Shown here one piece after another: positions 12,118 through 64,000 of a stretch of DNA of 64,000 bases. The stretch lies in assembly GCF_021869535.1 (NCBI RefSeq), contig NW_026262593.1, positions 14,260,001-14,324,000 of the forward strand. Reading direction: 5' to 3'. The DNA is from Mytilus californianus. Taxonomy: Eukaryota. The notes under the pieces are model-generated. The model worked only from the letters and a program-made list of their open reading frames with translations, was not told the DNA's origin and ran no database searches. A program made the position numbers and the translations under genes. Each line of letters starts with the position of its first letter. The stretch's first letter is position 1.

Positions 12118-12420
12118 AAAAAGAAGAAGATGTGGTATGATTGCCAATGAGACAACTCTCTACAAGAGACCAATTGACACAGAAATTAACAATATATAGG
12201 TCGCCGTATGGCCTTCAACAATGAGCAAACCCCATACCGCACAGTCAGCTATAAAAGGCTCCGAAATGACAATGTAAAACAATTCAAACGAGAAAAACTA
12301 ACGGCATAATTTATGTACAAAAAATTAACGAAAAACAAATATGTAACACATAAACAAACGACAACCACTGAATTACAGGCTCCTGACTTGGGACAGGCAC
12401 ATACATAAAACATTAAACGA
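12118..12420 (+). repeat. Dispersed repeat copy (GAGACAACTCTC family)
   Basis: Colinear with 3455-3730. Confidence 0.8.
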
Positions 12421-14854
12421 AAAACATGTATAGCAGAAACAAATAAGGAAATCTAATGCATTTCAGCCTTCTGACTTAGGAAAGTAGTCAGCATAATTAT
12501 TCGGGATTAAACATGTCTGCGAGCGCTAAACTCTGCTCTACCCGGGGGCAGTGCGGTAACAACACTACATAGGATATAAACTATAACAAAAGTTCACACG
12601 CTGAATTGTCTCACATGCGTTACTATTCGTGATTATTTGCTGTTGATAGTCCTGAATATATAGTTTTACTACAAGTATCACATATAAACTTAACAATACC
12701 AATGATTATAAGAAATGCGTTCAATGTAAGATAAACCAAGCCAGATAGACATGTTCACCATGCAATCATTACAAAGTATAGAGGACTTATAGCTTTAAGT
12801 ATACAAAAAAATAAAACAGACCAAACCATTAAAACTAAATATTGACCAATGAACTATGAAAATAAGGTCAAGGTCAATAACCGTCTCCAGCTACATGTAT
12901 GCCTTATACATCACCTGCAAGATAGACTCCACAACCAAAACCAATGTAACGATTTCGTATAGAACTAATCGGCAAAATTTTGATTACACTATATGTTTGT
13001 GTCTTTGAAGAGATGTAAAACTGAGAAAATATCAGTTTCTGCAAATGACACTATAACAGAGTATTGAAATTGTTTATTTTCTTTGTTTGTTTAAAATTTT
13101 GAAAAAATATTGAATTTCTTCCAAATTTTTATTTGTTGCAATAACATTTTAAACTGATTGTATGTGAACATATTAGTTTGAATTTCTCAGTCATTTGTGT
13201 TAAATGTCTGTGATGTATGTTTTAAATTACACAGTTTTTTGCAGCTGGATCTCAATAATCTAGTCTCACGTTAACCAATTTTATGTCTGCTTGGATTGCT
13301 GACCTAATTTTGTCTATATAACGGAAATATAAACAATTGCCATACAAGTGGGAGGTTAGGCTAGCTATAAAACCAGGTTTAACCCACAATTTTCTTCGGA
13401 CAATGCCTATACCAAGTCATGAATATGACAGTTGTTTTACATTCGTTCCGTTTGTTAATATGGTGGATTTTTCAGGTTTTCTGGACTTGCAATTTTTAAT
13501 TTAACCGTGGAATTAGGTATTTTTGTTAATATTTTTAAGCATTGTATGGGTAAATAAGCCATTGTTTTTTTATAGTTTATCACGCGGTATGGATTTTGCT
13601 CATGTATAAAGTCCACGTGGTGACTACTTGTAGTTGTTTTCATCCTTCTTGCATGCATTTTTTGTGGATATTTGTCTTATTGGAAATCACACTACATCTC
13701 CTTATTTTATTTACGGTCTAAAAACTAGTTTCCCTTGGAGATCAACATATGTTGGATAAATAAAAGAAATTTAATGCCATTTAATGATTTGTAAAATAAT
13801 TTATGAATGAATTTTAATAAAAATATATAATGGGTTACATTGTAATGAAAGCAAGTCATTAGATACTTGAAATATATTAATGTTTTATGCAATATTGACA
13901 TTTCATAAGTTAACATTACTTATTTATAAAAAGACCTTCAATTGGATGCTCTAACTGAATTGGTTAATATGACACAGTCTTAAGAAAACAATTAACGTGA
14001 TGGCCCTTTGAACAAATATGCATGCTTACGGTGACCTATAGTTGTTTACTTCTATGTCATCTGTCTCTTATGTGGAGAGTTGTCTCATTAGCAATCATAC
14101 CATATCTTCTTATTTTCATATTAATCTATCTTCAAAGACTAAACGAAACGTAGGTCTTACCTTTCACGTGTGTCCACAGACAAAGTAAAAAAGCCATGAC
14201 ACAAATCAATACATGAACTGCAAAACAACACACAAAAAGCAAAGGAAAACCGCGTTTAGTGTTGTTCTTCATCTCGAAGTCACTGTGAGGCCTTCAACAC
14301 GTAGCAATAAGCTCTCACCTCACTGCAAGTTTAAAACGACCCTATGGAATCCGTTTGAGCGGAGATCTTTGCAAAATAAGTCGGGTAGACTTTGTAAGAT
14401 GTAACACCACCAAATCAGGCCCGGTCAAAAAGAACATACTAGGAAGGAGTACATATTCAAAACAAAACAGTTCCTACTAAAGGTGAAAATATCAAACTAT
14501 TTAAAATATCTTTTGCCAATTTAATGAAAGGTGGGTGAAGGACATGTGATCCTTGTAGAACACATTTTGACTGATAATTTTGAATAATACAAAAATGTAT
14601 GAATAAATCTAAAAAGGAGGGTATATATTGACTGTTTATTCTTATTGGTATAGATATTGTTATAAACATGTGTACATTCACGGTCTTACAATTAGTCGAT
14701 ACCTATATTTTTGTATTGCACAAGGTCATGTTTATTTTTGTATTTACACTAAATCAATTGGATGTTGGATTTCAACTGATTGATATTTTAGTCTTAGATT
14801 CACGATTTTTTTTTTGTTAGTTAATTGTTATTGGTTTTGAACTAGCCCTTAATA

Positions 14855-15210
14855 AATGCGAGTACTCTATGATCTGTCCTCTTCTCTGTGTCTTTTGTGA
14901 TTTTTATGTGCTTTGTATCGATCTGATGAGGTAAACTCTTCTGTGTGTGCCTGTCCCAAACCAAGAGCCTATAATTCGGTGGTTGTCGTTTGTTGCTGTA
15001 TATCATGTTTGTTATTCTTTCACTGGCCATTAGTTTTCTTGTTTGCATTGTTATACATTTATCATTTCGGGGCCTTTTATAACTTAATGTACGGTGTTGG
15101 TTTTGGTCATTGTTGAAGGCCGAACTGTGACAGATAGTTGTTAACTTCTAAATCATTTCGTCTCTGGTGGTGAGTCCACTTTTCTCATTGGCAGTAATAC
15201 CACATTTTAT
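14855..15210 (-). repeat. Dispersed repeat copy (GAGACAACTCTC family, reverse, diverged)
   Basis: Reverse complement matches 3455-3730 and 12118-12400. Confidence 0.65.
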
Positions 15211-15681
15211 TTATAGTGTTAGTATCGTAAACACACGACAGTTACCTCATCAAATATCCCATGGTAAGCGTACACTTAGACTTTTGACATCAAATTGTAG
15301 TAATTCCTTCTACCGGAATTCGTACACCAGTGAAAGGGTACACATTTCTTGAAAAACTGTGTTTACAAAATCCTAGTTTTCTTTAACTAAATGATGCTTT
15401 TGTATTATTTTTTACGTCATTTTCAATCGTCATTTTGTTAAATTAATGTTATATGTGTATCCTTTTTGCTTATAATAAATGTTTTATATATACAGTAACA
15501 ACATGTCATTTGTGGTCGCTATACACCATATTACATAAAATGGTTTTAAAGATATCTTATACTATATACAGTCTCGTGTGACTTTTCGACAGTACATCCG
15601 GTTGAATTTTTTATATTTTGTTGTTTCCACTTTCTTGTCGATATCTGAAATTGTTGAGTCGCATCCATAGAAGTAACCATC

Positions 15682-18600
15682 TTACGGTAATCCCACTTTC
15701 TTGTCGATATCGATATCTGAAATTCGTGAGTCGCATCCATAGAAGTAACCATCTGAGGATAATCCCACTTTCTTGAGATACACAATATATCCTACAAACT
15801 GAAAATATACTTAATCCTGTAAAATTTGCTTTAAGTTTTGACATATCATTTATATACAATTGTGTTTTTTTTCTCTCTCACTTTTGTGATTTAATCAGTC
15901 TATAAATTCAGGGTATACTATTGAAATTAGAAATAAATCGTTTCATTTTCCCTGAATATAGTTCTTAAGACAGAAGTTTCTATTTGGGTCGTTCATCCAG
16001 TTTTATCAATATAATAGAACTATAAACAACTGTCATACACGTCGGAGGCTTAGATATCTATAAAACAAGGTTTAACTCGCCATTTCCTTCAGAAAATGTC
16101 TACACCAAGTCAGGAATATGACATTGGTTTTCATTCGTTCCTTTGGTTAATACTATTCCTATTCCTACACTTATGAAGATGATGATAATCATCTTTAACC
16201 TGATAAGTTATACATTGTATGGTTATTCTAAGAACACATATGAAGTGTGTACACTAATATGTAAGATATGTACTATTTGTTATTAGGGTCTAGGGAAAAT
16301 GGTTTATTTTTTTAGTTGAAACTGGGCTTGAGTAGTACTCCTGTGCTAACATCAAATATCACTGATACTGTAATTTTCCGTCCATTCATGAATTAATGAT
16401 TTATTAATTGCTAATTAAATTCACAAAAGTTTTGCCATATGATTAATGATTTTTAATTGACATGCAAACTCGGTCTTCAGAAATACTGTGAAATTATATA
16501 CCTGGTGTAAATCGGATTGAAATATTAAACAATACCGAGGTCTATTAGAAAACAAACACTCAATCTCGTCGTGCAATAGTATAGAAATATCTAAGCTTTA
16601 CAGAAACATTCCCCTTTCTGGACAGAAATACAGAAACCTAATAGAAACAAATATCTACTTTTAGAAATATACAAATCGTTAACGAAAATAACTTTTTTTA
16701 AATATTATGCGCCTGACGCTTTTTTTTTTTTTTTTTGTGTTGTTGTTGTTGTTTTTACCTTCATTAGAAACGCCCCAAAACATTTGAAAGCCAGGGATAT
16801 TTGAATACTAGTACGTAGCCGGAGATATTTGAATACTAGTACGTAGCCGGGGATATTTGAATACTAGTACGTAGCCGGGGATATTTGAATACTATTACGT
16901 AGCCGGGGGTATTTGAATACTAGTACGTAGCCGGGTATATTTGAATACTAGTACGTAGCCGGAGATATTTGAATACTAGTACGTAGCCGGGGACATTTGA
17001 ATACTATTACGTAGCCGGGGATATTTGAATACTAGTACGTAGCCGGGGATATGTGAATACTAGTACGTAGATACTTTAGGAGGTATATAACCAAAAGGGA
17101 ACTTAAATGTAAAGGCAAATTCATCTAAGGTCAAATTAGCAAATATTAAGCCCCCCTCCCCCCCCCCCGGGAAAAAAGTAAAAGAATTTAAATGAGAATA
17201 CTAACGGCCTGATTTATGCTATAATAAAAGATGAATGTGTCTGAGGACACGAATGCCCCCGCTGAAGCTTCAATTAAACGAAAATGGGACGGACGGACGG
17301 ACGGACGTAAAGACGGAAATACAGAAGGACAGACGGCCGGACGGAAGGACGGAAAGACGGACGGTCAATGGTAACACTTTAGTGCGTTGGTGGTAACACT
17401 GAAGTGCTATGGATTACATAAACTATGTGTTCTATATTTTGCATGTTCAAATGTCGATGTAGGATTCAATGTGTTTGTTAGTAGCAGAATGTCAGGCTGT
17501 TAAGTAAATCGTCGATGGTATGAAGCAAATTAAATAGGACGATCTCTTTTACGAACTGTAACGAAGGACATTCAATATATTCTTGTATTTTAAATGTCGA
17601 AAACACCGTTTAAAAAATGTACATCAAAGGTAGAAATGGAACTATATTATTAGCAAGGTACTTTTAGATGATATTTTAACAGTATTTCATTATCCCAAAT
17701 TCTTATATGTATGATAAACAGGCTTATTGCATGATGAGAATTCATTTTACGATTGTACTATTCCAACGAATACATATGATCAATACTTAAATGTCTTAAA
17801 TGCCATAAACTTTTGATGGACAATAATGAATGCAAATGTATGCACTTACTAATGCAAAACAATATTTCTAATAATAAATGCAAATGTTGATTTTAAACCA
17901 GCAATCACGCGTGATATGAATCATCTCACATCAGCAAAAGGTTAATCACACTTCGTCGAAGACCATCGCACTTCAGTGTGACCATCGCACATAAGTGCAA
18001 ACATATATCCTAGTTCCGATATTTCATGGCTTCAGTTTCATATATTGATTTCCAAGATAAAAGGTTGCGGTTTACAATAAAACCTCTAGAAGCAAAGATT
18101 CCAAGTGGTAAAACTGAATTAATCGATTTGAAGGTTTTATCGGCACCCCTATGAGTTGGTTGACCGTTATGAAATTTTATTGTCACAAAGGATCACGCAT
18201 ATGTTCAAATTGTAATAGTCACAATGCCATCTTATTTTGCTCGATTTAAACATCACAAAATGTAACTTTTAATAGATTTTCCATCGCCGAGTAGTAACTC
18301 GACGGATGTCATTAATGAAACAAGAACGTCTCACCCTTAAATAGCAAACTAAATACACCAATAGTTGTGATTGAAAGGGTTCTGTATTTAGTGCTTTTTC
18401 ATGTTGCATTGTCAGTGTTGTTTTCAGTGGAAACAGTCTTGTCTATCCTTTGTCTCAAATTATTCTATTTTCACAAATTTGGAGGTTTAAAAATATACAT
18501 GCCCAATGATTTAGGAATTTGGAGATGTCTTAAAGTTGAAAAAAAGAAAGAAACATTTATCCATTATGTTGGATGTTCAATGACGAAGACTTATCAACAG

Positions 18601-21600
18601 TTGGGAGGCTTAATCTTATACCAAGTTGAAGATCATAAAAAAACGAATATTCCAAAACGTTTTGCCAAATACGGCTTATAAATTTATGCCTAGGGTAGAA
18701 CAGCCTGATAAATATAACATTTTATAAACAGAAAAGTTATAGAAAACGAACGAATCAATAATAGTTAGGGTCGGCACAAAATAGCTTACTACCAGACTGA
18801 TGCTACCTTAAGGTACAAAACATCCAACCGACGAAGCATCAACCAAGTGGTTGTGAATAACCCATCTAATATATCAAGCTTCAAAAGACTCATCAGTGGC
18901 GCTCGAATGAAAACGGGTTGAAGACCACTTCAAAAACGATGTTGAAAAGAATTTAAAATCAAAACCGAATAATTCGAGAATCACACTGTTTGAACTCTTG
19001 AACTGTTTGATATTTTGTTATCCCTGAACCTTTATAATAGCTTAATACATGGTTAGGGTTTTGATCATTGTTGAAGGTAAATTTAGAGTGAGCTCATTGG
19101 CCTTCATATAACATGATTGTCCTCGTGTTCACACATATAATCTCATCGACATCACTATACATTCTAATATTACCTTCATTAATCCTAATATTCCACTGGA
19201 AATGCAATAAAAATATCCATCGATCTGTCTTATGTCACGTGGTGATAAATACAATCTAAGAACTGAACAACTTATAATGCACAACACTCCTATCAAATAA
19301 AAATAAAAGGAAATTAAGATAATGTATCTTAAACATTGACTGCATAACCTTCAGGATCTAAAATCTAAGAAGGAGATGTGAATTTTGCTGAATGGATTTA
19401 TCTCATTATGTCGATACCACTGCAGGTGAACTGTTAGTCCTGGAAGGTATCATCATGCAGTTCAGTTGACAGTGCTTTGATCCTGCCATAATTTATAAGA
19501 TTTTTTTCTGAAAAATTCCATGTTGATGAATGAAGAAAATATTAATAAACTATGGCTCCAACTTCCAGAAGCAAAATTGACCTTAGATGAAGTTAGCTAT
19601 TCTTTTTCTTTCCTTTTTTTGTCATCCTACGTATTTATACATGACTGACTTTTAAATGTTTGTGTTTGAGCGTTACTGATGCAAGTTAATCCACAAAAGC
19701 AATTCGGACGCACGAAATTTGTAAAGTATTAATTTCATCTACAGTCCGAAAGTTGATAAAAACTAGTTAAATTTGATGTATGTTAGGATTTTTTATGGTA
19801 GAACTGTCATGACCAGTTCTAGAGTAAAACTGTCAAAATCAGTCCTATTGCAGATCTGTATAAACATGTCATAGGCTAGACATGATACTGTCAGAAACTG
19901 TTCTATATACTGTTCTAGAACGGTTCCCCTGACAGATTTTGATCTCAATAGAGTGTCATAGGGTAGACATGCTCCTGTCAGAAACTGTTCTATATACTGT
20001 TCTACATACTGTTCTAGAACGGTTCTCCTGACAGATTTTGATCTCAATAGAGTGTCATAGGGTAGACATGCTCCTGTCAGAAACTGTTCTATATACTGTT
20101 CTACATACTGTTCTAGAACGGTTCTCCTGACAGATTTTGATCTCAATAGAGTGTCATAGGGTAGACATGCTCCTGTCAGAAACTGTTCTATAAACTGTTC
20201 TACATACTGTTCTAGAACGGTTCTCCTGACAGATTTTGATCTTAATAGAGGTTAGAACTGATCCCAATAGAAGTTCTTTCCCGAAAGTTCGGATGTTACT
20301 TAGCATATAGAGCGTGTCGTATGTGGGAACCAATATCTTGGTGACCCAAAGGCAGCCTGTCCAAAAAAGCATCACATTGCTTAGGAGCAATGTAATAAAC
20401 AAACCATTATGATATAGATTAGTGAGCACAACCTTGATAACTTGTGACTGAATAGAAAACTTACTTGAATCATTCTAAGCGAGATGATTTCGGGACATAC
20501 ATGTATTAAGAAACACAAAGAATTGTATTTTTCATTTACTTATAAACTGAGAGATGTTTGAAGTTTAAAGTTAGATATAGTTTTAACTCACCTACTACGA
20601 ATCCTTCTAACAATATCCATACCCAACGGAAACAGTCACTAAAGCATAATCCTAGGAAAATTTTGCTGACTGTACACGTTGTACACCAAGAAAAAAATAT
20701 GTGAAAACAACAAACGCTATGTGGAAGCAGAAAGATGACTATGATGAACTGGAAGAAGACACATATTGCTTGTGTATAGTAAAAGAATTCAAAAGCATAT
20801 TCTCCTAAAATATAAAAATACATACATGGTCATAAAACAGGGACGAACGTTATTTGTTTAAAGAGTGTCCGAAAATGAAAGTTTATTCTCCTGTATGTTT
20901 AAAAACAATAATGATATATTTTGGATATTGTTTGCCTTAAGACTTAACAAACTATTTGCCTGATATATAAAATGTCTATTATGGGCATGTGTATCGTTTG
21001 CATTGAACACAAAGATCCCTGGGTTTGAATACATTGAATGAAATATGTTCTATAGGAGCCAACTGAGCTCTTCATTTTATCGACTTGTTCCTTTAATCAT
21101 ATGAGGAGGAAAGAAGCAAGCACTATCATTTAACATCACATTCTACTTCACTTGTAGATGATGTACTCTCACCTAATAATACAAAATTTGGTGACTATGT
21201 TGAACTCAGTTTCATCGAACTTGAAATAAAGGATATCTCAGAAAAAGTTAAGTCCGCGTCATATCTTGACATACATCTAGAAATTGACAATGATGGTTGA
21301 CGGTTGAGAACAAAACTTTACGACACAAAATATAATTTCAGCTTTCTGATTACGACCCTTCCGTTTCTATGTACAACATTCCAGCAGGCTTGCACATGGA
21401 GTATACGTCTCAAATCTTTCAGTTGATACGATATTCCAGAGCTTGCGTTTTCTATCATGATTTCTAGGATAGAGTGGTGCTGTCTTCATGGAAGTTAATG
21501 AATTGAATACTCATTAGTGGTCAAGTTGAAATAATCACTTGAGAAGTTTACAGGCGACATCATGAGTTGGTTGTCCGTTATGTAATATCTGTGTCACAGC

Positions 21601-23247
21601 TGACCACGTACATGTTACACCTTTCGTAGTCATTGTCTAGTTCGTTTTTCCTCTATTGTGACATCACCGAACGAGACTTAGCAACGAATGAGTGCCTACT
21701 ATGAGCAACACGACGGATGCTACTTGTGGAGCAGGATATTATAACCCGTCCGGGCAACTGATATAATCCATGGTATTAGTTTGTACACAATGGTCTTAAA
21801 GTAAAGATTCTGGGTACTGACGTTGTTTATCATCTTAATAACGTGTTATATAGTATTCTTGTATTTGTCTTTTTGAATATTACTTTTACTGTTTAGTTTA
21901 TTTTTGGTGTTATTCATTTGACGTGGCTCGGTACTTATACATCCCGTCATTGTGTTATTGTGCTATGGTAAATTTTTGTATTCTCGTCTTTCATTTTTGC
22001 TTATGTGCTTTGTCTTTATGTCTTTTTGTGTTTATTTGTTACATATTTGTTTGTTTTCATAGTGATTAAGATTATAACACAATGTTGACTGTTGTACCCC
22101 TATTTTGACATTTTTACCTATTATGTCTGTTTGTTTTGTTCACACATCATTATCAATATAATGGAATTTAATGCGACTGTCATACAAGTGAGAGGTTTAG
22201 CTAGCTATAAAACCAGTTTTAATCCACCATTTCTACATAAGAAAATGCCTGTACCAAGTCAGGAATATGTCAGTTGTTATCCATATGGTCGTTTGATGTG
22301 TTTGAGCTTTTGATTTTGAAATTTGATAAGGGACTTTCCGTTTTGAATTTCCTCGGAGTTCAGTATTTTTTTTATTTTCCTTTTTTTTGTAGGTAGTGTT
22401 GTATAGACTGTTGTTCGTCTTTTCGTTTCTTTTTGTCATTAATTAGTCAGCCTCTCTTCGAATTATGAATTTGATTCTCCCCATGATGTTTCCCGCCTTT
22501 TTTTTACCAAATAACAGAAGAACAACAAAATATATCTCTAACATGAATATATGACTATTTCTTAATTTTTTTTTGTCAGGTGATATTTGTAGTAGAAAAT
22601 CACCCTCGCGACCATCGTACTTAAGTTTGCGCTGCAGAAATTGAAATTAAATGTTTGGCAGGAAATGCTAACCTGAATTTAACACGTAAACTGTTTGAGA
22701 GAAAATAGTGCTATACTGTATACTATAAGTACAAGTAACAAAATTTTATTACATTTACATGCAAGTTTTATTTACTCCCGATGTATGGTGTTAAGATGTA
22801 AGTTTTATAACATAAAAATCAATATTTATTTGCTTTTTGTTTCGCTTATATACTTATTTGCTTATTTGCCTAACCGTTTTCGCATGTTTTAAGATTATGA
22901 GTATTATTGAGTATTGAAATAACTTATAAGGTCTTATAAATTAGCACCATAATCTTTGTAAATATATGCAGATAGCAGGAAATATAAACGTAACTCTACT
23001 CACCCATACTTCTCGTTGAATTTGGGAAACCATCTTCATTTTCTAACTTAAAAGTACAAGAATCGCTAGAGGGGAGTACTCTACAAAGATCTGATGTATC
23101 CGTTTTTTGGTTGAAAGGATCTAGCTTCAAAAATCCTATTAACTCCAAAGAAAAACCTCCCCCAACTAATACAAGTAGAACGAACGGTAGAAAGATACAG
23201 TTTTTGCTATTGCCTTTCGAATTTCGTTCGTCCCTATTTACCTCCAT
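15682..23247 (-). CDS. Uncharacterised four-transmembrane protein, paralog A (229 aa, C-tail truncated). Exons 23247-23004, 20804-20592, 19289-19174, 15798-15682
   Basis: All introns are GT-AG with phases 1,1,0 shared with paralog B. Translation: MEVNRDERNSKGNSKNCIFLPFVLLVLVGGGFSLELIGFLKLDPF...MG/EYAFEFFYYTQAICVFFQF...WVWILLEGFVV/GVLCIISCSVLRLYLSPRDIRQIDGYFYCISSGILGLMK/FVGYIVYLKKVGLSSDGYFYGC...VGLP*. The last exon has a ~70-bp internal duplication with an early stop. Confidence 0.8.
16795..17070. repeat. 28-bp minisatellite, 10 units, in intron 3 of paralog A
   Basis: Unit GATATTTGAATACTAGTACGTAGCCGGG at 28-bp period (GAATAC at 16803, 16831, 16859...). No spacers. Confidence 0.95.
17228..17400 (+). 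repeat. Fragment of a (GGAC)n-containing non-autonomous element (pearl/HINE-like bivalve repeat)
   Basis: GTGTCTGAGGACACGAATGCCCCC followed by a GGAC microsatellite. A similarly organised element in opposite orientation lies at ~33420-33520. Confidence 0.5.
18090..18350 (+). mobile_element. Penelope-like element 3' fragment, degenerate
   Basis: TATGAGTTGGTTGACCGTTATG segment shared with the other PLE fragments. Confidence 0.55.
19870..20250. repeat. 99-bp tandem repeat, ~4 copies, with an internal 12-bp subrepeat, in intron 2 of paralog A
   Basis: GTAGACATGCTCCTGTCAGAAACTG at 19963, 20062 and 20161; internal (TATACTGTTCTA)-type subunits. Confidence 0.93.
21060..21770 (+). mobile_element. 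Penelope-like RT fragment, degenerate, in intron 1 of paralog A
   Basis: GTAGATGATGTACTCTCA (DDVLS-type RT motif C region), TCATATCTTGACATACATCTAGAAATTGAC, TTGAGAACAAAACTTTACGAC; frameshifted. Confidence 0.75.
21905..22400. repeat. Dispersed repeat copy (CCTGTACCAAGTCAGGAATATG family)
   Basis: Shared segments at ~2210-2350, 13340-13520 and 16020-16150; reverse copies at 51740-52150 and 53030-53250. Confidence 0.8.
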
Positions 23248-24385
23248 GTTATAATGTTAGATTTAACTGTCATATATTAATAGACCAATGTATTTCATTG
23301 GCATTGAATAGGATAATTCATCCGTACAACTAAAGAGGAAGTAAAAAATATAAAAATTTCTTCTTTCAGCGGAACACTTCCGTTACATTTTTTAAAATCC
23401 CATGAGAATAAATATTCTTTTCATCAATATTTTAATTTATATTGTCCTTACGTTAAAAAAAACGACCATCCGATATAGCTTACACATATCGTGCCGGAAC
23501 TGTAGTGATCGGGGAACATTTCCCTGGCTGTCATCAAACAAAACAAATGGGTTATATGATATTTGTTTTTATCGGCCATTTGGACATTTTTCCTTTGAGC
23601 CTACTGCCTAATATTTTATAAAGAAAGGACAGAACGTGATACTGGAGAATATTAAGCAATGACGTGACGTAACAATACAACAATGACACGTTTTCATGTC
23701 AATCCGCGTCAATTTATCAATGAAATGCAGGCAACGTCTATTATACAACCCAACAACTATCACAACGCTGTGTAAACGTAAATAAATGACTGAAAGTATT
23801 ATTATAATGTAAGAATATTTTCAATGCAAATAAAAAAAATATCAAGGTCAAGTAAACGTAAATATTTCAATATTTCTGGTGGTGGTAAAATACGTAGTGC
23901 AAATATCAGGTAAATAGTTTATTGCAAAAATATGTCTAGCGTAAAAAAAAATCTATTTCTCAAGATGAAAAAAAAAAAATTTAATTGAATTTCACAAAAT
24001 AAACAGAAACATGTACAAATACCTGGTAATGAAAAATACACTAAGGCAGGGGTAATTCGAAATATAAGTTCAGGTTTCAGACCAGGCATATATTCTGACT
24101 TTCTCGCGAAAAGGGGGGGGGGGGGGGGGGGGTAAAAAGGGGGGGGGGGCTATTATCCTCGCATTTTGTTCAGGGAATATAAACCCAATGCCTGGAATGT
24201 CACATTATATTCCCTCTCTAAGACCTGAATAACATATGATATGCCTCCGGTTCGCCCTAGTGTCAGTACAACAATAACCACAACAACATCAAGAATGCCA
24301 TATATACGTGTGCTTTACTCGTGCAACTCGTAAATATTTTCATTGCTTCTTTTTATAGATTGAACAGCAACTGCACAGTGTATAG

Positions 24386-47185: not shown

Positions 47186-47653
47186 TAAAATATGTCGCTC
47201 AATGTCCACACTGAGTATTTCATAGTGCGTATCAAAACATGTTGATTAAAAGTTATGGATAAGAAATGTAAAAAGAAACCGAAATACAAAATAAATAAGG
47301 AAACACAATAAATTTAACTCCAGAAAGTCAGAATTGTGAATTATAAGTAAAATTTCCAAAATGATAAGAGCATCATTATATTGTATGATAACTCTAAAGA
47401 TTCTTTAAATGTGGTTTAAAATAACCTTTAACCGGTACTGTGAAAATATGGACTTTGTGTGTATCTTAATAGCATGAAACTGCTTGATTCATATGTTACT
47501 CCGTGGAAATAGCGACCACGCTTGTAATATTTTTCTTAAATCTTTAAATTTATTCTTATAATAGTTTGAGATAAATAACAGCTTTCAGATTGAGATACAT
47601 TGTTAAGTAGCAACATGCCGACAGTTCTCAACTATACATTACATGTAACGGCG

Positions 47654-50600
47654 TTAATGATAGCTTATGCTATATATAAACTCTTTTTCCTTTCTGATAG
47701 TACGTCCGGCCGAATTTTTATATTTTCTTATGCCCACTTGCTTTTTCTCAACCGTGATGTTTTTAAATTGATAGTTGCATCCATAGAAGTAATCGCCTGA
47801 AGGAAATCCAACTTTCTTTTGGTAAACAATATAACCTACAAACTGGAAAAAATAATCTTGAAATAAGTTTTTAAAAATGTAAAATACTAATTAAAGAAGT
47901 TAAATGATCTGCTGCAACATGTATGTATCAACCTACCGTAGTACTCAGAGCCTGTTATGAGAGCACCGATGTTGACACATTGATGATGATGCAAATGATG
48001 AAGATGGATGGCTGTTTAATAGGTAGTGACAAATCAAATGCAAATGCTGGACGAGATAATTTGTATGTGATATCAACCATGATTTGACACATTGGACTCT
48101 GATTAAAACTAATAAGCAAAGTTACAAGGTTACAGACCACAAGAAGTCGCATTATTCTGAATCTGAACCTAACATTTTTACATTTTTTTTCCGGCTTCAT
48201 AACGTGTACTCAGCAAAAATCTGCACATATCAATTTGCGTTTGTTTCACTCCGACAGCGATAAATCCCGAGACTTCCGACACACAAACAGCATCTGGATA
48301 TGGACAATAAATAAGCGTAAATATAAAACTGTTGAAAAATCGAGATAAATAAAATCCCTGAATTGCTTTAATCATACGAAATTAGGCAACCTGTGCCCTT
48401 CTGTTTGATCTCCGTTTCTAAAACTGGTTTAAATAATCAATACATTTTTTGATATTCCTTCAAACATTTTTAACATAAAATGCTAATTTTATTTCAGCAT
48501 TAAGTGGTGTTATTTTATATACCACTGTCCCAAATAAGGGAAGGGTTGAGGGCTTAAAATGTTTAACCCAACCACATTCTTTATGCCCCTGTCCCATGCC
48601 AGAAGCCTGAAATTCAGTGATTGTTGTTGGTAACTCTTTGTGATATTTGGTTTGTATCTATTGTAGTTTAGAATCAAATTATTGGTTCTCAAATTTGATT
48701 TATTTAACATGTTGCCATGTTAATGCCTTTTAAAGAGTACTTTTCAGTATGAGTTTGCCTATTGTTGAAGTCCGTACGGTGACCTATAATTCAAACCATC
48801 TTTGTCATTTCAAGTTTGGTAGAGAGTTGTCTCATCGGATATAATACCACATCTAATTGTTTCAATAAACAACGCGGTATTTGTATTATCCAGAACTCCA
48901 ACCAAATGCTTTTTTTCCATTTTACAAGAAAAATGAAATGTATAACATTGTACAAGTTCAGATGTAGCAGAATACTGCGAACTATGTAAATTTGAAATAT
49001 ATATTGTTTCTCCTTATCAATGATGAATTATAAAATTACCTTCAGTATTCCTAATATTCCATTGGAAAGGCAATAAAAGAATCCATCGATCTGTCTTATG
49101 TCACTTGGTGACAAATACATTCCAAGAACCGAACAACTTATTATGCAGGTAATTCCTATCAAATAGAAAATGTTGAATCATCACTATATTTTTTACGGTT
49201 TCAAATCTATGAGTTTGAGCGAAAAGATGTTTGACTAATTTCCCTTAATTTGTTTCACTCACCAAGTCACAATCCGAAAGACGATAAAACCTTGTGTAAT
49301 TGAATACCAATGAGTGTAACCGATATACTGTTATGATAATTTAAATACTTTTAACAAACACACCAAAACAAAGAATCTAATCATTACAGTACAGTGTCCT
49401 TGATATTGCAATGTTAAAAGTTGCAAATTGAATATATTGTAATGTATACATTTTGCTACTGATCCCCTACAAAGGCCAAACCGCTATGCCTCTCTATAAA
49501 TCCGTAGGGGGTCAGTAGCAAATCGTATAAAGAATTTATCTCCCTCTATTAAATCACCACGTAAAGGGGTTAAACCAATCGCAGCGTCACTAACTCACCT
49601 GAGATGTTATAATATAAGTGAGAGGGTATGCTACTGACCCTATATGGATCACGGCATAGAGGGTATGTTTAATCCATAGGGGTGAGCCGTAAGGGTTTAG
49701 CAGTACAACGATTTATCGCACGCGGCATTTTTTCTGGCAAGTTTTGTAAAACAAACAAAAAAGAGCGAAATACAATTATAACACTTATAATGTGACGTCA
49801 TGATACCCATACCTACGGATTCATAGGGGTTTATTACGTGACGGAGTTAAACCAATCATCTAAATCAACTAAATCACCCGAGGTGCAATAATGTTTAAAA
49901 TATAGTTTTTCTTACCTACAAAGCCTTCTAACAGTATCCATACCCAGTGGAAACAGGGACAAAAGCATAACCCCATACAGCATCGGATAATTTGTCGCCT
50001 GATACAACAATTGCAACATACATAGAAGCAAAAACATATATGAGGAAGAATTATGTTGACCGTAATGAACTGGAAGAAGATACACTGCGCCTGTGTATAG
50101 GAAAAGAATTCAAACGTATATTCTCCTAAAAATAAAAATAAAAAATACTTGCAATGGCATAAAATGGAACGATTTTTTTATGCTAATGGGGTATCTCTAT
50201 ATCAATAAACTCATCAGATAGTAGGATTAAAATAATGTACACTAGACGCTGTTTATACTACTGAAATATGGTAACTTTTCAAGCTAGGACCAGTAATTGT
50301 TGTATTCAAGCAGTCTACACTATGAACTTTTCAATCTGCGGAGCTCAATTTTTGGACAATTTTAGTTAGATTTTGTTGGCCTGTAGATAAGATTTTACAG
50401 GCCCGAGAGCAATTTTACATGCCTTGGCCACTGGGCATGTGGTTCAGCGTGAAGACTGTTTAAGGGGTATTAGATTTCAAATTCTTGTTCATCGATTCGA
50501 CCTAAACATTTCGTATGTTATTTGAAACATACTGAAACGTGTATTCAAATTACAAAACGTCTTATATTAGAGAAACAATTTCCAATGCATGTATTTTATT

Positions 50601-51221
50601 ACCAAATATGAGTGTAACAATCGAGATGATGTCCGAAGAATACCGTAGGTCACATTACGCGATGTTGACATAAATATAAATATGAAAACACAGGCAAGCA
50701 CCGCCAATCGTATAACAACGATTTTTGTAGGTCTGTTTGATTTCATATCATGGATAAGAAAACAATTCAAATCATCGTTTTACCTGTATTCGAAAGTTTT
50801 TGTGGTTAGATTCAGTCAACGAAGGGAATCACTTTCTCGTGTAAGTGTTCTTTTCTTCTCAATATACGTTTGATCGAAGTAAAACAAGAAGATAATTAGT
50901 TCCGTTTTGTCTCTGCTTGAAAGGAAAAACATCTTTTCGTCGGAATAATATTTAAATGTAAATGTATCTCTACTCACCCATACTTTTCGTTGAATTTGGC
51001 AAAATATCTTCATTTTCCGGCTTAAACGTACAAGATTTGCTAGAGGGAAGTAATCTGCAAAGATCTGACGTATCATTCCTTTGGTTAAAGGGATCTAGCT
51101 TTAAAAATCCAAATAATTCTAAGGAAAAACCTCCCCCAACTAAAGCAAGTAGAACAAACGGTAGACAGATACAGTTTCTGCTGTCGCCTTCCGACTTTTG
51201 TTCGTTCTCATTTGACTCCAT
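47654..51221 (-). CDS. Uncharacterised four-transmembrane Cys-rich protein, paralog B (252 aa, intact). Exons 51221-50978, 50125-49916, 49155-49040, 47842-47654
   Basis: MESNENEQKSEGDSRNCICLPFVLLALVGGGFSLELFGFLKLDPFNQRNDTSDLC...MG/EYTFEFFSYTQAQCIFFQFITVNIILPHICFCFYVCCNCCIRRQIIRCCMGLCFCPCFHWVWILLEGFV/GITCIISCSVLGMYLSPSDIRQIDGFFYCLSNGILGILK/FVGYIVYQKKVG...FIYSISYH*. Intron positions are the same as in paralog A. Confidence 0.85.
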
Positions 51222-51739
51222 GTTAGAACAGTAAGTATAATTGTCATATATTAATAAAATGTATTTAAATTGTCTTAAAAAAGATAGTGCATTCATCCGT
51301 ACAATCAAAAGGAAATAAAAAAGCATTTGATGAAGTCAGTCTTTCAGCGGAATACTTCCCTGTAAAATTAAAAAATAAAACAATATGAATACAATTTTTT
51401 TCACAAATATTTGGTTTCTTGTTAATTGTCATATTAGTCATTTTTTTTATTCCACAAAGATGTAGCATTTACCAGGGCTTACAAATATCATGCTGTATCT
51501 TTTGTGATAAGGGAAATTTGACCCTGAACAGATAAGAAAAATAAATTGGCTTACATGATAAGTTTCTGTGTCAGTTCAACAATAATAAACGTTAATAATG
51601 ACATATCTGACCGATGTCGACAAACATACTAATACTTGATAATTTCATTGCTCCTGATATTTATTGAACACAAACTGCACAATACATCGAATCGGATCAG
51701 GAAAACGAGTCATTGCTTATGTTCAAAAGTAAAATAACA

Positions 51740-52150
51740 AATATACATTATTGTCAATGTAATGGGGGAAAAAGTAAAATCACAAAAAATACTGAACTCC
51801 CAGGAAAATTCAAAACAGAAAGTCCCAAATCAAATGGCAAAATCAAAAGCTCAAACGAATGGATAACAACTGTCATATTCCCGACTTGGCACATCATTTT
51901 CTTATGTAAAATGGTGGATTGAACCTGGTTTTATATCTAGCTAAACCTTTCACTTGTATGACAGTCGCATCAAATTCCATTATATTGACAATGATACGTG
52001 AACAAAACAAACAGACATAATAGGTAAAAATGTCAAAAATAGGGGTACAGCAGTCAACATTGTGTCATAATCATAACCACAATAAAAACAAACAAATATT
52101 TAACAAAGAAGCACAAAAAATCATATATCAAATTTAACAACCTCGTTCAT
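51740..52150. repeat. Dispersed repeat copy (reverse of the 21905-22400 family); a second partial copy lies at 53030-53250
   Basis: Shared TTCCATTATATTGACAAT...GGGGTACAGCAGTCAACATTGTGT. Confidence 0.8.
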
Positions 52151-57695: not shown

Positions 57696-60674
57696 TCAGG
57701 TTAGTTCCACATTAAAGACGTCCTTTAATAAAATATAATCACATAGGACTTTTGGCAAACCGATTTGATCTATGATTGTATGGGGATAATACCCAAGTTG
57801 TTTGCGTATACTAATACGACATAATTCCTTTAACTTGCGCGGCTTAAGATATTTTCTCGTACAATTCAGATCTTTGTCAGTCCCAGGAAGGTCATACTTT
57901 AATATGTCATGCCATTTGTAAATTTCACATCCAGATGCAACTAAAATTTGTATAAACGTCTGCATTTTTTGATAAGCATGTATAAGTGGTGGAAACTGTA
58001 TCATTTGGTCTGGGAGATCTCGGTATAAGATATTTAAATCACAGTTTACGTATAGAAGCTGATGTAAAATCTCATAATTGCCAGTATCTATAACATAGCC
58101 AATCGAAGGAAAACCTCGTTGGTCACGGAAATCTGGGTTTATTCTACACTCTAAAAACAGACGAAAGCACCTTCCAACTTCAAGTGAATAGTTTGGAAGA
58201 TAATGCGATAGCATACAAAAGTGAGGAGCTATATGTCCCCGTCTCTGATTCATGTTATACATATCACATCCAGTCTGAAGTAAGCGTTTAATTTCTTCAT
58301 ACTTAATTTGGCCGGAACTTTTCATAAGCGGGGTATTGCCATCGTTGTCTCTGGCTTCTAAGTCTATTTTGTTAGTTTTAAGAAGACAGTCAAGAATTTC
58401 TATGTTATTTTGTGGACTTTCCGGTCCACTGACACAGACATGGAGAGCTGTGACTCCATTTTGACTACTTTTGAGATTAACATCTGCATCGTTCTGAAGA
58501 AGATATTTGACGACAGATAAATGTCCATATCTGACGGATTGCATGAGGACCGTCTCTCCAAACATCAGATTCGTATCATCTACTCGGACATGTCCTAGTT
58601 CGATGAAATATCGTACTATATCTAGATTACCGTTCTGAATAGCTGTTCCATAGGCGAGAATGATGCTACTTTGTTCTCCTTTGATGGTGCATAAAATGTC
58701 CCGAACTGTTTCAGAGTCGTTTCTTTCAATGGCTTGAATTAAACTTTAATAAATATAAAATAAAATATATAGAAAAATAATATCAATAACGTAATATAAA
58801 AAGAAAGCGTGAATTGTAGTTAATCATATCTTAATGTTTGTCGTTCTCTTGATATGTTGATGTAAACAAAAGTTTTTGTTTGATCCTATTAAATTAATAT
58901 GCAACTTTAAAGATTCTGGACATTTTATAACTTGATATATTGTATAAACATTAGTTTATTGTTGAAGACTATATTGATCTATATATATGTATGTATGCTT
59001 ATTTGTTGTTGATGTGCTGTCTTCTTAATATATACCCCATATAACTTTTTTGCTCATTGTTAATGGTCATACGGTGACCTGTAGTTCACCTTGTCCTTTG
59101 GTCTTTGATACATATGTCTCATTAGCAATCGTATTTTATATGATTTAACATATCTGGACCTTCGATTGGGTTATTTCCTTTGACCGATAACGTAGTTTAT
59201 ATGAAATGCTGTTTGATGTCCGATTTATTTCTACTATTTTCTTTATTTTTTCGTGATTACTGGGTGCAAGCAATTACTTGTTTTAAGGCTAAAACAGTTC
59301 GACTTCAGTGTCTGGCGTTTTGACATTGAATTAATTGTGTGTTGTTGGTTGAATGCTTAACATCCAGTGGCAAGTAATTTTGCAAGTCCAGGACAAAATC
59401 AACTTAAACAATACCTGTTAATCAAAAACTGTAAATTCTGAAATTATTGCGATGTTTTTATAAATGCGAATAATAAATGCGGCAGTATCAGGTTCGCATT
59501 GATAAAAGCTCGCATTCATAATTTCAGTTGTGATTTTCCTTAACAAAGCTTTTGCAATCCCATTAATAAGATCTCGTACTTTTAGCAATTACTAGTAATC
59601 AATGAATCGCAAAAATAAATGCACGCCTTAATTTCTGAATTTACAGTACCCAGTTACTGTAGACTGGTGGCCATGGATGGGGACAGACATTTATACTTGC
59701 AACAAGCCACCTATACGGACTTCAAAAAGTTGTTACAATGATTTTTTATCGCGCAGATTGGGATAGACGTCCATAAGAAGTCCAATCGCATTGATTGCAT
59801 AAAAGTTGCAATAATTTTCTTTTCCTTGGAAATCCGTCGTTAGTTTGACATTTGACCTACTAGTTTGACATTTGACCTACCCAGGCAATATTTCATGCAT
59901 TGGTTTCTATAATTAAGATTTGATGAATTATTTGTTGAAATATGAAGTAGCATACAAGGGCCAATGATGAAAACAAACGTCCAGTGGCAAATGTTTCATG
60001 CTTATTCAGGTCGAAAACAAAGCAACAATAAATCCAACAGGCTCTTTATAATGGATTGACTCTTAGTGTGACACTTGAGTCGTTGGGTATAATGTCCTCA
60101 TTCCGACCAGATTTTCTCTAACCGAGTCGTTGGGTATTATGTCTTCATTCCGACCAGACATTGTATACAGCCAAACAGACCTCCGTCTCACGAGTTTCAA
60201 TATGGAATCTGCGAAGTTCTGGTGACCGCATTATGTTAGCAAATCCAAAGAAGAATGGCAATATATATGACCAGCTGTTACAATTAAACAATGAGCAAAC
60301 ATTTAATAAAGACAACGCTAAAATGAGAAAGAAGATTTATTGAAACCCCTATATTTGAAAAGGAAAGTCCCAGGAAATGACTATGGAAAACACATACTAA
60401 TCAGACTTTAAAAGATAAAAGAATAACTAATTGATTTACTTTTTAGCATTCCTCGATCCTTTTAGACTCTTAATAGATAAGAAAATTAATTCATTTCCAA
60501 ATAATTTGATTGATGAGTTTCTTAATCTTTACCTGGTTTACAGATAACGTTACCTCCCTTGATCTCCCTTGCAATTATTGCTTAAATTTTTTTTATGATT
60601 ACTAGTTACCTTGATAAAGTTCGTGTGATGATTTCACGCTTTTCGTACAATTGTCCAACGTTTCGTGCATACAT
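57696..60674 (-). CDS. Ankyrin repeat and SOCS box protein (ASB-like), copy 1, ~370 aa. Main exon 58743-57696 plus an inferred first exon 60674-60610
   Basis: Ankyrin repeats (GETVLMQSVRYGHLSVVKYLLQNDADVN, GVTALH, GNTPLM) and C-terminal SOCS box PRKLKELCRISIRKQL...IGLPKVLCDYILL. The ORF extends to an acceptor at 58744. Candidate exon 1 MYARNVGQLYEKREIITRTLS ends AG|GTAACT in the matching phase 2. Confidence 0.85.
59428..59648. mobile_element. MITE with ~19-bp TIRs (TA-flanked type)
   Basis: ACTGTAAATTCTGAAATTA ... TAATTTCTGAATTTACAGT, 1 mismatch. Confidence 0.75.
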
Positions 60675-63348: not shown

Positions 63349-64000
63349 TTATGATAATTCAACATCAATAACATCTTTCAATAAAATGTAGTTAGAAACA
63401 GTTTTGGGAAGACCTAATTGATCGATAAATATATGAGGGTAATATCCAATTTGTTTGCGTATGAGAATTCGACATAATTGTTTTAAAGTTCTGGGGGATT
63501 TCCCAATATCAGACAAGTTAAACTGATTAAGGTCATCACATACAATGTCACACCATTTATGTACATCACATCCAGCGGCAAATAAAATTTCTATAAGCCG
63601 CCTTTGTTTTCGTTGACAAGCATGGACGAATGGTGGACAAATTGATCTCGTAACTAGCATATCTTGGTATAAAATATTAATATCACAGTTTGAATAAATA
63701 AGTAAGCACAATATTTTGTAAATCCCAGTGTTTATTGCGTAACCAATAAATGGAATATCAGATGTGTCGCGGAAGTCAGGGTCTATTCTATTTTCTAAAA
63801 ATATACGGAAACACTCAACTACGACTGTGAATGCTGAGAAATATCTTGATGACATACAGAAATGTGCTGCTATTTGTCCTCGTTTTTGGTGTATGGCGTA
63901 CATATCACATCCTGCCACAATTAATCGTTTAATTTCCTCAATTTTGGCTTGGTTAGAGGCTAGGATAAGAGGCGTCTGACCATCGTTATTTCTTGCCTCT
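63349..64000 (-). CDS. Ankyrin repeat and SOCS box protein (ASB-like), copy 2, 5'-partial (runs off the window)
   Basis: EARNNDGQTPLILAS...GCDMYAIHQKRGQIAAHFCM...PRTLKQLCRILIRKQIGYYPHIFIDQLGLPKTVSNYILLKDVIDVELS*; colinear with copy 1. Confidence 0.9.
   Translation of the reverse strand, partial: EARNNDGQTPLILASNQAKIEEIKRLIVAGCDMYAIHQKRGQIAAHFCMSSRYFSAFTVVVECFRIFLENRIDPDFRDTSDIPFIGYAINTGIYKILCLLIYSNCDINILYQDMLVTRSICPPFVHACQRKQRRLIEILFAAGCDVHKWCDIVCDDLNQFNLSDIGKSPRTLKQLCRILIRKQIGYYPHIFIDQLGLPKTVSNYILLKDVIDVELS

What the first reader, a model, noticed from the sequence alone, without database searches (positions are those of the whole stretch)
47654..51221. Duplicated gene for an unrecognised four-transmembrane, Cys-rich protein
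Seen: two 4-exon paralogs (A 15682-23247, B 47654-51221) share intron positions and phases. Each has four hydrophobic segments and a ~60-aa first loop with two conserved Cys; N-x-S/T sites are NDT and NST in B, NST only in A. Known: this layout matches the claudin/PMP22/EMP tetraspan clan, but the claudin W-GLW signature is absent. The ancestral termini end ...SYH and ...RYL, with a penultimate Tyr as in claudin YV tails. Inference: a lineage-specific, fast-evolving tetraspan family I cannot assign to any named family.
Basis: partly seen in the sequence, partly recalled or inferred. Interest (0 to 1): 0.7.

Follow-up and report, generated by a model that had tools for sequence, protein, structure and literature searches.

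The report
Mussel-only four-pass membrane protein gene pair
Two neighbouring, spliced and transcribed genes of the California mussel encode a small four-pass, cysteine-rich membrane glycoprotein found so far almost only in Mytilus mussels and matching no named protein family; it is a real but ordinary orphan gene pair of unknown role.

Summary
On the minus strand, gene B (CDS 51221-47654, 252 aa) and gene A (CDS 23247-15682, 229 aa) each have four GT-AG exons with the same intron positions and phases (1, 1, 0).

Gene A's spliced product is letter-for-letter RefSeq LOC127719613, "uncharacterized protein" of Mytilus californianus. That names the genome.

All three B junctions are spanned by one 1190-nt spliced contig from a related species' run. 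Two runs labelled with the assembly's own species show the exon 3-4 junction. A transcript from another mussel confirms the junctions of A.

The protein has four hydrophobic helices. Its first loop is about 50 aa, with a conserved C-x8-C pair and N-x-S/T sites. The TM2-TM3 region is Cys-rich and the tail Tyr-rich.

The 1.65-Gb genome holds only these two copies. dN/dS is 0.34 between paralogs and 0.45 for A against an ortholog.

No Pfam or PDB sequence match appeared. A six-frame PMP22_Claudin scan found other claudin-like exons in this genome but not these. AlphaFold models were poor (pLDDT 48 and 56), and fold searches returned only generic helical bundles.

Database relatives are four Mytilus proteins, two short fragments and one distant exon-1 fragment.

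Verdict: a real, mussel-restricted, unassigned tetraspan family. Its function is inferred only.

The parts
50978..51221 (-). Gene B exon 1 (CDS): start codon, N-terminus, TM1 and most of the first loop with C55, C64, N49 and N76. The donor is GTGAGT, phase 1.
   Evidence: Junction 50977|50124 is spanned by the 1190-nt spliced contig of run X2.
49916..50125 (-). Gene B exon 2: end of loop 1, TM2, Cys-rich cytosolic loop and first half of TM3. Phase 1 in, phase 1 out.
   Evidence: Both of its junctions are in the X2 contig.
49040..49155 (-). Gene B exon 3: second half of TM3, short second loop (SPSDIRQIDG) and first half of TM4. Phase 0 out.
   Evidence: Junction 49040|47842 is seen in contigs of X1, X2 and X4.
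47654..47842 (-). Gene B exon 4 (CDS part): end of TM4, KKVG, YFYGC motif, tail ending IYSISYH, stop TAA.
   Evidence: The tail is shared with M. edulis P0007.
47304..47653 (-). Gene B 3' UTR, at least this far.
   Evidence: The X2 spliced contig continues to 47304, with a 48-nt replaced stretch. The X4 contig starts at 47579.
51222..51412 (-). Gene B 5' UTR and promoter-proximal block, conserved with A (23248-23432). The related-species transcript reaches 51272. In-frame upstream ATGs lie at 51326 and 51296, beyond that end.
23004..23247 (-). Gene A exon 1 (CDS).
   Evidence: The spliced product equals P0005. The orthologous transcript L036 maps here.
20592..20804 (-). Gene A exon 2 (one codon longer than in B).
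19174..19289 (-). Gene A exon 3.
15682..15798 (-). Gene A exon 4 (CDS part), ending at a TAA inside the second copy of a tandem duplication.
15638..15775 (-). 72-nt tandem duplication (1.9 copies, 92% match) in exon 4 of A. It brings in the early stop. It is absent from the orthologs P0002 and P0006.
14546..15681 (-). Gene A 3' UTR, as far as the orthologous transcript aligns (92% identity). It contains the out-of-frame remnant of the old tail (...YSIRYL).

Best explanation
A and B are two functional paralogs, 24 kb apart on the same strand of a Mytilus californianus chromosome. They arose by a duplication older than the split from M. edulis.

Each encodes a small integral membrane glycoprotein with four transmembrane helices. 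From the charge distribution and the position of the N-x-S/T sites, both ends are inferred to face the cytosol.

Inferred layout:
- The first exoplasmic loop is about 50 aa. It is probably N-glycosylated and stapled by a C55-C64 disulfide.
- The short TM2-TM3 cytosolic loop and the helix ends carry cysteine clusters, which are the likely sites of S-acylation.
- The cytosolic tail carries an invariant YFYGC motif. In the B type it also carries a conserved terminal IYSISYH, a candidate sorting or docking motif.

The most likely mode of action is non-enzymatic. The protein would act as a cell-surface or secretory-pathway tetraspan that organises membrane patches or partners other membrane proteins, as claudin, PMP22, LHFPL and TARP-type proteins do. 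It cannot be shown to belong to that or any other named family.

Shown here: the gene models, splicing, transcription, copy number, purifying selection, four helices, and the lack of detectable relatives outside mussels. Inferred only: topology, glycosylation, disulfide, acylation, cellular location and role.
For: Gene models and phases. Spliced A is identical to RefSeq LOC127719613.

Transcription and splicing:
- All three B junctions lie in one spliced contig of run X2. The exon 3-4 junction is also in X1 and X4, which carry the same species label as the DNA runs that hold this stretch.
- An A-type mRNA contig, L036, has a contiguous CDS and maps exon by exon onto A.

Copy number: only two copies in the 1.65-Gb genome.

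Selection: dN/dS is 0.34 for A vs B (Fisher p 1e-8) and 0.45 for A vs its ortholog (p 0.002).

Age of the duplication: the split {B, P0007} against {A, P0002, P0006} has 100/99 support.

Structure: four hydrophobic segments and four long helices. Conserved C55, C64, YFYGC and IYSISYH appear in the alignments.

No named family: with the positive control.

Restricted range.
Against: - Nothing here tests function, location or topology.
- Both structure models are of low confidence (pLDDT 48 and 56). The fold class beyond 'four-helix membrane bundle' is therefore open.
- Only exon 1 (81 positions) was searched with full HMMER sensitivity. The full-length profile was searched only through a word index, so relatives below about 30% identity could exist unseen.
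- The RNA-seq run of the same study as the DNA runs that hold this stretch (X7, 6% of it read) showed no reads on the exons of B. X1 also holds unspliced pieces. Expression is therefore low or tissue-limited.
- The M. edulis B-type model P0007 spans 454 kb and may be mis-joined.
Confidence: 0.6

Rival explanations
1. It is a true but highly diverged member of the claudin / PMP22 / EMP / LHFPL / amastin superfamily. It would share their ancestry and fold but has lost the W-GLW signature.
For: - The layout is the same: four helices, a long glycosylated first loop with two Cys 8 residues apart, a short second loop, and juxtamembrane Cys.
- The nearest named clusters in the ESM Atlas feature search are a molluscan amastin-like cluster, claudin, and LHFPL/PMP22 clusters. 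They score 0.80-0.81, a level the tool itself calls chance-prone.
- TARP gamma-2, GSG1L and a designed claudin fold appear among the weak structural matches.
Against: - No Trp at all in the first loop.
- No Pfam hit at E<=10 for the exons or for full-length proteins.
- A six-frame PF00822 scan of the genome finds 33 other exon matches but none at A or B.
- hhalign against a same-genome Claudin_2 protein gives probability 0.4%.
- No beta strands are predicted in loop 1, though the model is of low confidence.
- The structural hits do not stand out from unrelated bundles.
Confidence: 0.28
2. It is a vesicle or organelle tetraspan of the MARVEL/synaptogyrin or sarcospan type rather than a surface protein.
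For: Synaptogyrin and sarcospan are among the best weak structural matches:
- 8a6m, Z 6.5.
- 9c3c_n, Z 6.7 and 7.9.
- The ESM Atlas synaptogyrin cluster, TM 0.44/0.49.

The tail is Tyr-rich, as in physins and gyrins (from general knowledge).
Against: - No MARVEL or other Pfam hit.
- All Z values fall within the range the tool reports as normal for any helical bundle.
- The models are of low confidence.
- The first loop is much longer than I recall for synaptogyrins (from memory).
Confidence: 0.06
3. It is a metal-handling membrane protein. In this reading the many cysteines in and around TM2-TM3 (including CC-x-CC and CPC in B), together with the conserved Pro-His and Glu/Asp inside helices, bind or pass metal ions.
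For: - Cys is 7.9% of B, with 12 Cys within a 29-residue stretch.
- Conserved polar residues Q100, P109-H110 and E/D148 lie inside the predicted helices.
Against: - The CPC and CC-x-CC motifs are not conserved in A or in the M. edulis proteins.
- No match to any transporter family.
- Juxtamembrane Cys clusters are more commonly acylation sites (general knowledge).
Confidence: 0.04
4. One or both copies are decaying genes without function. A in particular would be a pseudogene in the making, because of its frameshifted and then truncated tail.
For: - The A-type tail lost the ancestral reading frame through a 1-nt change in an A-run. In M. californianus it gained an earlier stop through a 72-nt duplication.
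- Expression of B is low.
Against: - Both reading frames are intact through all four helices.
- dN/dS is significantly below 1.
- The A type is transcribed and spliced in another species.
- RefSeq models A as protein-coding.
- The truncation removes only about a dozen poorly conserved tail residues.
Confidence: 0.04

Closest known systems
Claudin / PMP22 / EMP / MP20 / LHFPL / TARP superfamily (Pfam PF00822, PF13903, PF10242)
   Same: - Size is about 230-250 aa.
- Four helices with both ends inferred cytosolic.
- The first exoplasmic loop is long, with N-glycosylation sites and two Cys 8 residues apart.
- The second loop is short.
- Cys clusters lie at the cytosolic helix ends.
   Different: - No Trp and no GLW in loop 1.
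- No profile match at all, while a same-genome member scores 4e-15.
- The tail ends -SYH or -GLP, not -YV or -TTPV.
- No beta-sheet is predicted in loop 1 (low confidence).
MARVEL-domain tetraspans (synaptogyrin, physins)
   Same: Four-helix bundle of similar size, with a cytosolic Tyr-rich tail. These are among the best, though weak, structural matches.
   Different: No PF01284 match. The first loop is much longer and carries the conserved Cys pair. Match scores are at background level.
Sarcospan / tetraspanin-like proteins
   Same: Four-pass small membrane protein. Weak structural match at Z 6.7-7.9.
   Different: Tetraspanins and sarcospan have their large, Cys-bearing loop between TM3 and TM4. 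Here that loop is about 10 aa and has no Cys. No PF00335 match.

Membership tests
Claudin/PMP22/EMP/LHFPL superfamily | Four transmembrane helices with a long first and a short second extracellular loop. | tested here: met
   Hydropathy gives four segments. AlphaFold helices are 10-42, 81-124, 138-165 and 177-201. The orientation is inferred, not tested.
Claudin/PMP22/EMP/LHFPL superfamily | Loop-1 signature W...GLW...C-x(8-10)-C. | tested here: not met
   The alignments show no Trp anywhere in loop 1. Only the C-x8-C pair is present.
Claudin/PMP22/EMP/LHFPL superfamily | Significant match to the family profiles (PF00822, PF13903, PF10242 and clan relatives). | tested here: not met
   No hit at E<=10 for the four B exons, P0002, P0005, P0006 or P0007. 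The PF00822 six-frame scan of the genome misses A and B. The control ORF L035 scores 3.9e-15. hhalign against that ORF gives probability 0.4%.
Claudin/PMP22/EMP/LHFPL superfamily | Claudin fold: a left-handed four-helix bundle with a beta-sheet formed by the extracellular loops. | tested here: inconclusive
   The models have pLDDT 48 and 56 and no strands in loop 1. Fold searches are flat, with best Z 7.6-8.1. A designed claudin fold reaches Z 7.3 and TARPs reach Foldseek E about 1.
Claudin/PMP22/EMP/LHFPL superfamily | C-terminal PDZ-binding motif (-YV in most claudins, -TTPV in TARPs). | tested here: not met
   B ends -SYH and A ends -GLP. The -RYL of A is out of frame.
Tetraspanin (PF00335) | Large second extracellular loop with a CCG motif, and a profile match. 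| tested here: not met
   The second loop is about 10 aa (SPSDIRQIDG) without Cys. No Pfam hit.
MARVEL (PF01284) | Profile match to the MARVEL domain. | tested here: not met
   No Pfam hit at E<=10. The structural resemblance to synaptogyrin is only at background level.
Connexin / innexin / pannexin | Conserved Cys in both extracellular loops, and a profile match. | tested here: not met
   No Cys in loop 2 and no Pfam hit. Connexins appear only at Z 6.3-6.8 among unrelated bundles.

The most novel reading that the evidence does not exclude
The family is a tetraspan born or remodelled beyond recognition within mytilid mussels, unrelated in sequence and perhaps in fold to claudin, MARVEL or tetraspanin proteins. 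It would serve a mussel-specific cell-surface function, with its own conserved loop motif (L-x-P-F...LC-x2-[LV]P-x-S-x-SCT) and a B-type C-terminal IYSISYH docking motif.
Probability: 0.3. Interest if true: 0.45.

Novelty: new variant of a known kind. Interest (0 to 1): 0.3.

Why it matters
Bivalve genomes are full of lineage-restricted genes whose roles are unknown. This is a clean, well-supported example.

- It is a two-copy family with confirmed splicing, purifying selection, and a membrane layout like that of junction and accessory tetraspans.
- It shows no detectable tie to those families.
- If a deeper profile or a good structure showed it to be an extreme claudin-clan member, it would extend the known sequence range of that clan in molluscs.
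- If not, it would be a small new membrane-protein family.
- It also flags a likely gap: no protein matching gene B of M. californianus turned up in the databases searched.

None of this bears on a long-standing open question, so the interest is modest.

Tried and rejected
- **Pfam on the four B exons and on four full-length relatives at E<=10.** The only hit was a chance one to DUF3671 (E 0.03, 14 bits against a cut-off of 34).
- **PDB sequence search with a single protein and with a profile.** Noise only: a BTB protein at E 0.59 and RuBisCO at E 0.04.
- **Word search with exon 1.** Found one 82-aa fragment.
- **Word searches with P0002 and with the family profile.** Both returned the same four Mytilus proteins.
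- **Full HMMER search with the exon-1 profile.** Three hits in total.
- **ESM Atlas by features and by structure.** No usable hit for exon 1. For P0005 only leads at 0.80-0.87 and TM below 0.5.
- **Two AlphaFold runs.** pLDDT 48 and 56.
- **Four fold searches.** Flat lists of helical bundles.
- **hhalign against a same-genome claudin-like ORF.** Probability 0.4%.
- **Search for more paralogs in the genome** with exons, the family profile and the distant fragment. None found.
- **M. edulis locus of P0007.** No DNA was returned because the gene model spans 454 kb, so orthologous dN/dS for B could not be computed.
- **Literature.** No paper names LOC127719613.
- **PLAC8-like CC...CPC motif in B.** Considered and dropped. 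The spacing is wrong, it is not conserved in A, and Pfam shows nothing.
- **Joined 252-aa product of B.** It has no reference, so it was not sent to any search or fold tool. B was searched exon by exon. Full-length work used P0005 (identical to A) and P0007. Exons were joined only inside local scripts, for length, hydropathy, dN/dS and a small tree.
Full report
**What is there**

Three-frame translation and the DNA at the block edges put both genes on the minus strand.

| Gene | Exons (window coordinates) | Exon lengths (nt) | Product |
|---|---|---|---|
| B | 51221-50978, 50125-49916, 49155-49040, 47842-47654 | 244, 210, 116, 189 | 252 aa |
| A | 23247-23004, 20804-20592, 19289-19174, 15798-15682 | 244, 213, 116, 117 | 229 aa |

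- Every intron is GT-AG with a pyrimidine-rich acceptor.
- Intron phases are 1, 1, 0 in both genes.

**Independent support for the models**

- The spliced product of A is identical, letter for letter, to P0005. This is RefSeq [quoted passage not shown].
- That names the genome. The assembly size of 1.65 Gb in 175 contigs agrees with the published reference (PMC9710001).
- For B, a 1190-nt contig of run X2, from a related species, joins 50977|50124, 49915|49154 and 49040|47842. These are exactly the modelled junctions. The contig runs from 51272 to 47304.
- Runs X1 and X4 carry the same species label as the DNA runs that hold this stretch. Both show the 49040|47842 junction at 99-100% identity.
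- X1 also holds short unspliced pieces. The raw RNA-seq run X7, of which 6% was read, has no reads on the exons. Expression is therefore low or restricted.
- For A, a 1806-nt Logan transcript (L036, SRR13891791) encodes P0002 as one open frame. It maps exon by exon onto A, with a 3' UTR reaching 14546.

**The protein**

- Kyte-Doolittle windows give four hydrophobic segments.
- Both AlphaFold models give four long helices, at about 10-42, 81-124, 138-165 and 177-201.
- The first loop (about aa 41 to 88-95) is acidic. It has two invariant Cys (C55, C64; C-x8-C). It carries NDT and NST in B and NST only in A.
- The TM2-TM3 link is basic and very Cys-rich. B has 20 Cys in total and A has 14.
- The second loop is about 10 aa, without Cys.
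- TM4 is followed by KKVG and an invariant YFYGC.
- B and the M. edulis B-type protein P0007 share the last seven residues, IYSISYH, although the residues before them differ.
- From the positive-inside rule and the site of the sequons I infer both ends cytosolic, loop 1 exoplasmic, glycosylated and disulfide-stapled, and the Cys clusters as acylation sites. None of this was tested.

**Evolution**

- The genome holds only these two copies. This was checked with exon queries, the family profile and the distant fragment.
- Outside the exons, A and B share only about 190 nt upstream of the ATG and some repeats.
- For A vs B, dS is 0.59 and dN/dS 0.34 (Fisher p 1e-8).
- For A vs its ortholog L036, dS is 0.19 and dN/dS 0.45 (p 0.002).
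- A small ML tree separates {B, P0007} from {A, P0002, P0006} with 100/99 support. The duplication therefore predates the split from M. edulis.
- The A-type tail lost the ancestral frame. The remnant still reads ...YSIRYL in another frame.
- In M. californianus a 72-nt tandem duplication (15638-15775) adds an earlier stop. The orthologs P0002 and P0006 lack this duplication.
- Both genes thus look constrained, with a loosely constrained tail in A.

**Relatives**

- The joined B product has no reference, so B was searched exon by exon.
- The word search with exon 1 found one 82-aa fragment at 93% identity.
- A full HMMER search of 1.84 billion representatives with an exon-1 profile found three proteins. 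They are P0002 (full length, A type), an 83-aa fragment, and P0004.
- P0004 is 91 aa and 44-45% identical to exon 1 of A and B. It comes from a 1440-nt contig of SRR29152234 and has the same phase-1 donor.
- Word searches with P0002 and with the family profile found only P0002, P0005, and the M. edulis proteins P0006 and P0007. All are unnamed or "uncharacterized".
- The P0007 gene model spans 454 kb and may be mis-joined. Its first exon lies just downstream of an ankyrin-SOCS gene, as B does here.

**Family assignment**

- No Pfam family matches the exons or the full-length proteins at E<=10, apart from a chance DUF3671 hit far below its cut-off.
- PDB sequence searches give noise.
- A six-frame PF00822 scan of the whole genome finds 33 exon matches elsewhere and none at A or B.
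- A same-genome single-exon claudin-like ORF (L035) scores 3.9e-15 against Claudin_2 in the Pfam scan. This is the positive control.
- hhalign of the family against that ORF gives probability 0.4%.
- ESM Atlas features list a molluscan amastin-like cluster, claudin, and LHFPL/PMP22 clusters as the nearest named clusters. They score only 0.80-0.81, which the tool rates as chance-prone.
- The AlphaFold models are poor (pLDDT 48 and 56).
- Fold searches return flat lists of unrelated helical bundles (best Z 7.6-8.1; Foldseek E at least 0.2; Atlas TM at most 0.49). Sarcospan, synaptogyrin, TARPs, connexins and a designed claudin fold are scattered among them.
- The layout is therefore claudin-like, but the defining loop signature and every profile test fail, and the fold test is inconclusive.

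**Verdict**

- This is a real, transcribed, selectively constrained pair of genes for a four-pass membrane glycoprotein. On present data it is confined to Mytilus plus one more distant sample, and it belongs to no named family.
- My working mechanism is a non-enzymatic surface or secretory-pathway tetraspan that organises or accompanies other membrane proteins. I put this at about 30%.
- True but unrecognisable claudin-clan ancestry is the main rival.
- One member is already in RefSeq as an uncharacterised protein. Orphan genes are common in mussels, so the interest is modest.

**Limits**

- Only exon 1 had a fully sensitive database search.
- No HHpred-type library search, no DeepTMHMM and no search of other bivalve genomes were available.

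Noticed in passing
window 57696-58565 (-) and 63349-63918 (-): Two ORFs with ankyrin repeats and a SOCS box (ASB-like) lie upstream of gene B on the same strand. In M. edulis an Ank+SOCS gene likewise sits about 4 kb upstream of the first exon of P0007, so local gene order is conserved.
   Followed up: partly
I only saw its long ORFs in the ORF list.
   Followed up: no
window 48557-48875, also 12120-12408 and 3438-3762: A dispersed repeat sits in intron 3 of B. It also occurs in the 3' UTR of the A-type transcript L036 (1149-1423). It is very abundant in the RNA-type contigs of all runs laid (summed depth 400-970), with many loose ends at 48754, 48788 and 48822. No tRNA was found there.
   Followed up: partly
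window 51769-51995, 22146-22385, 16003-16139, 13310-13447, 2218-2350: Another repeat family (75-86% identity) lies upstream of B and, in the opposite orientation, in the introns of A and at two other places in the window.
   Followed up: no
window 51296 and 51326 (-): Two in-frame ATGs without an intervening stop lie upstream of the B start codon. Used, they would add a hydrophobic 25-35 aa extension. The related-species transcript ends at 51272, and A has stops there, so they are probably outside the mRNA. An X1 contig does reach 51361.
   Followed up: partly
M. edulis GCA_963676685.2, locus of P0007 (no DNA returned): The B-type gene model spans 454 kb and encloses several other genes, including an unannotated 233-aa gene without Pfam hits. 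This suggests a mis-joined model or extra copies of the family in M. edulis.
   Followed up: no
L024 1129-1737 (-) = G000:C143 near 6978092: This is the last exon of a stargazin/TARP-like gene of M. californianus. It ends in the classic PDZ ligand ...RRTTPV.
   Followed up: no
L005 1-50: The first 35-50 nt of the distant relative's contig match several places in the M. californianus genome at 86-97% identity. This is probably the end of a shared mobile element and hints that the source is a bivalve.
   Followed up: no
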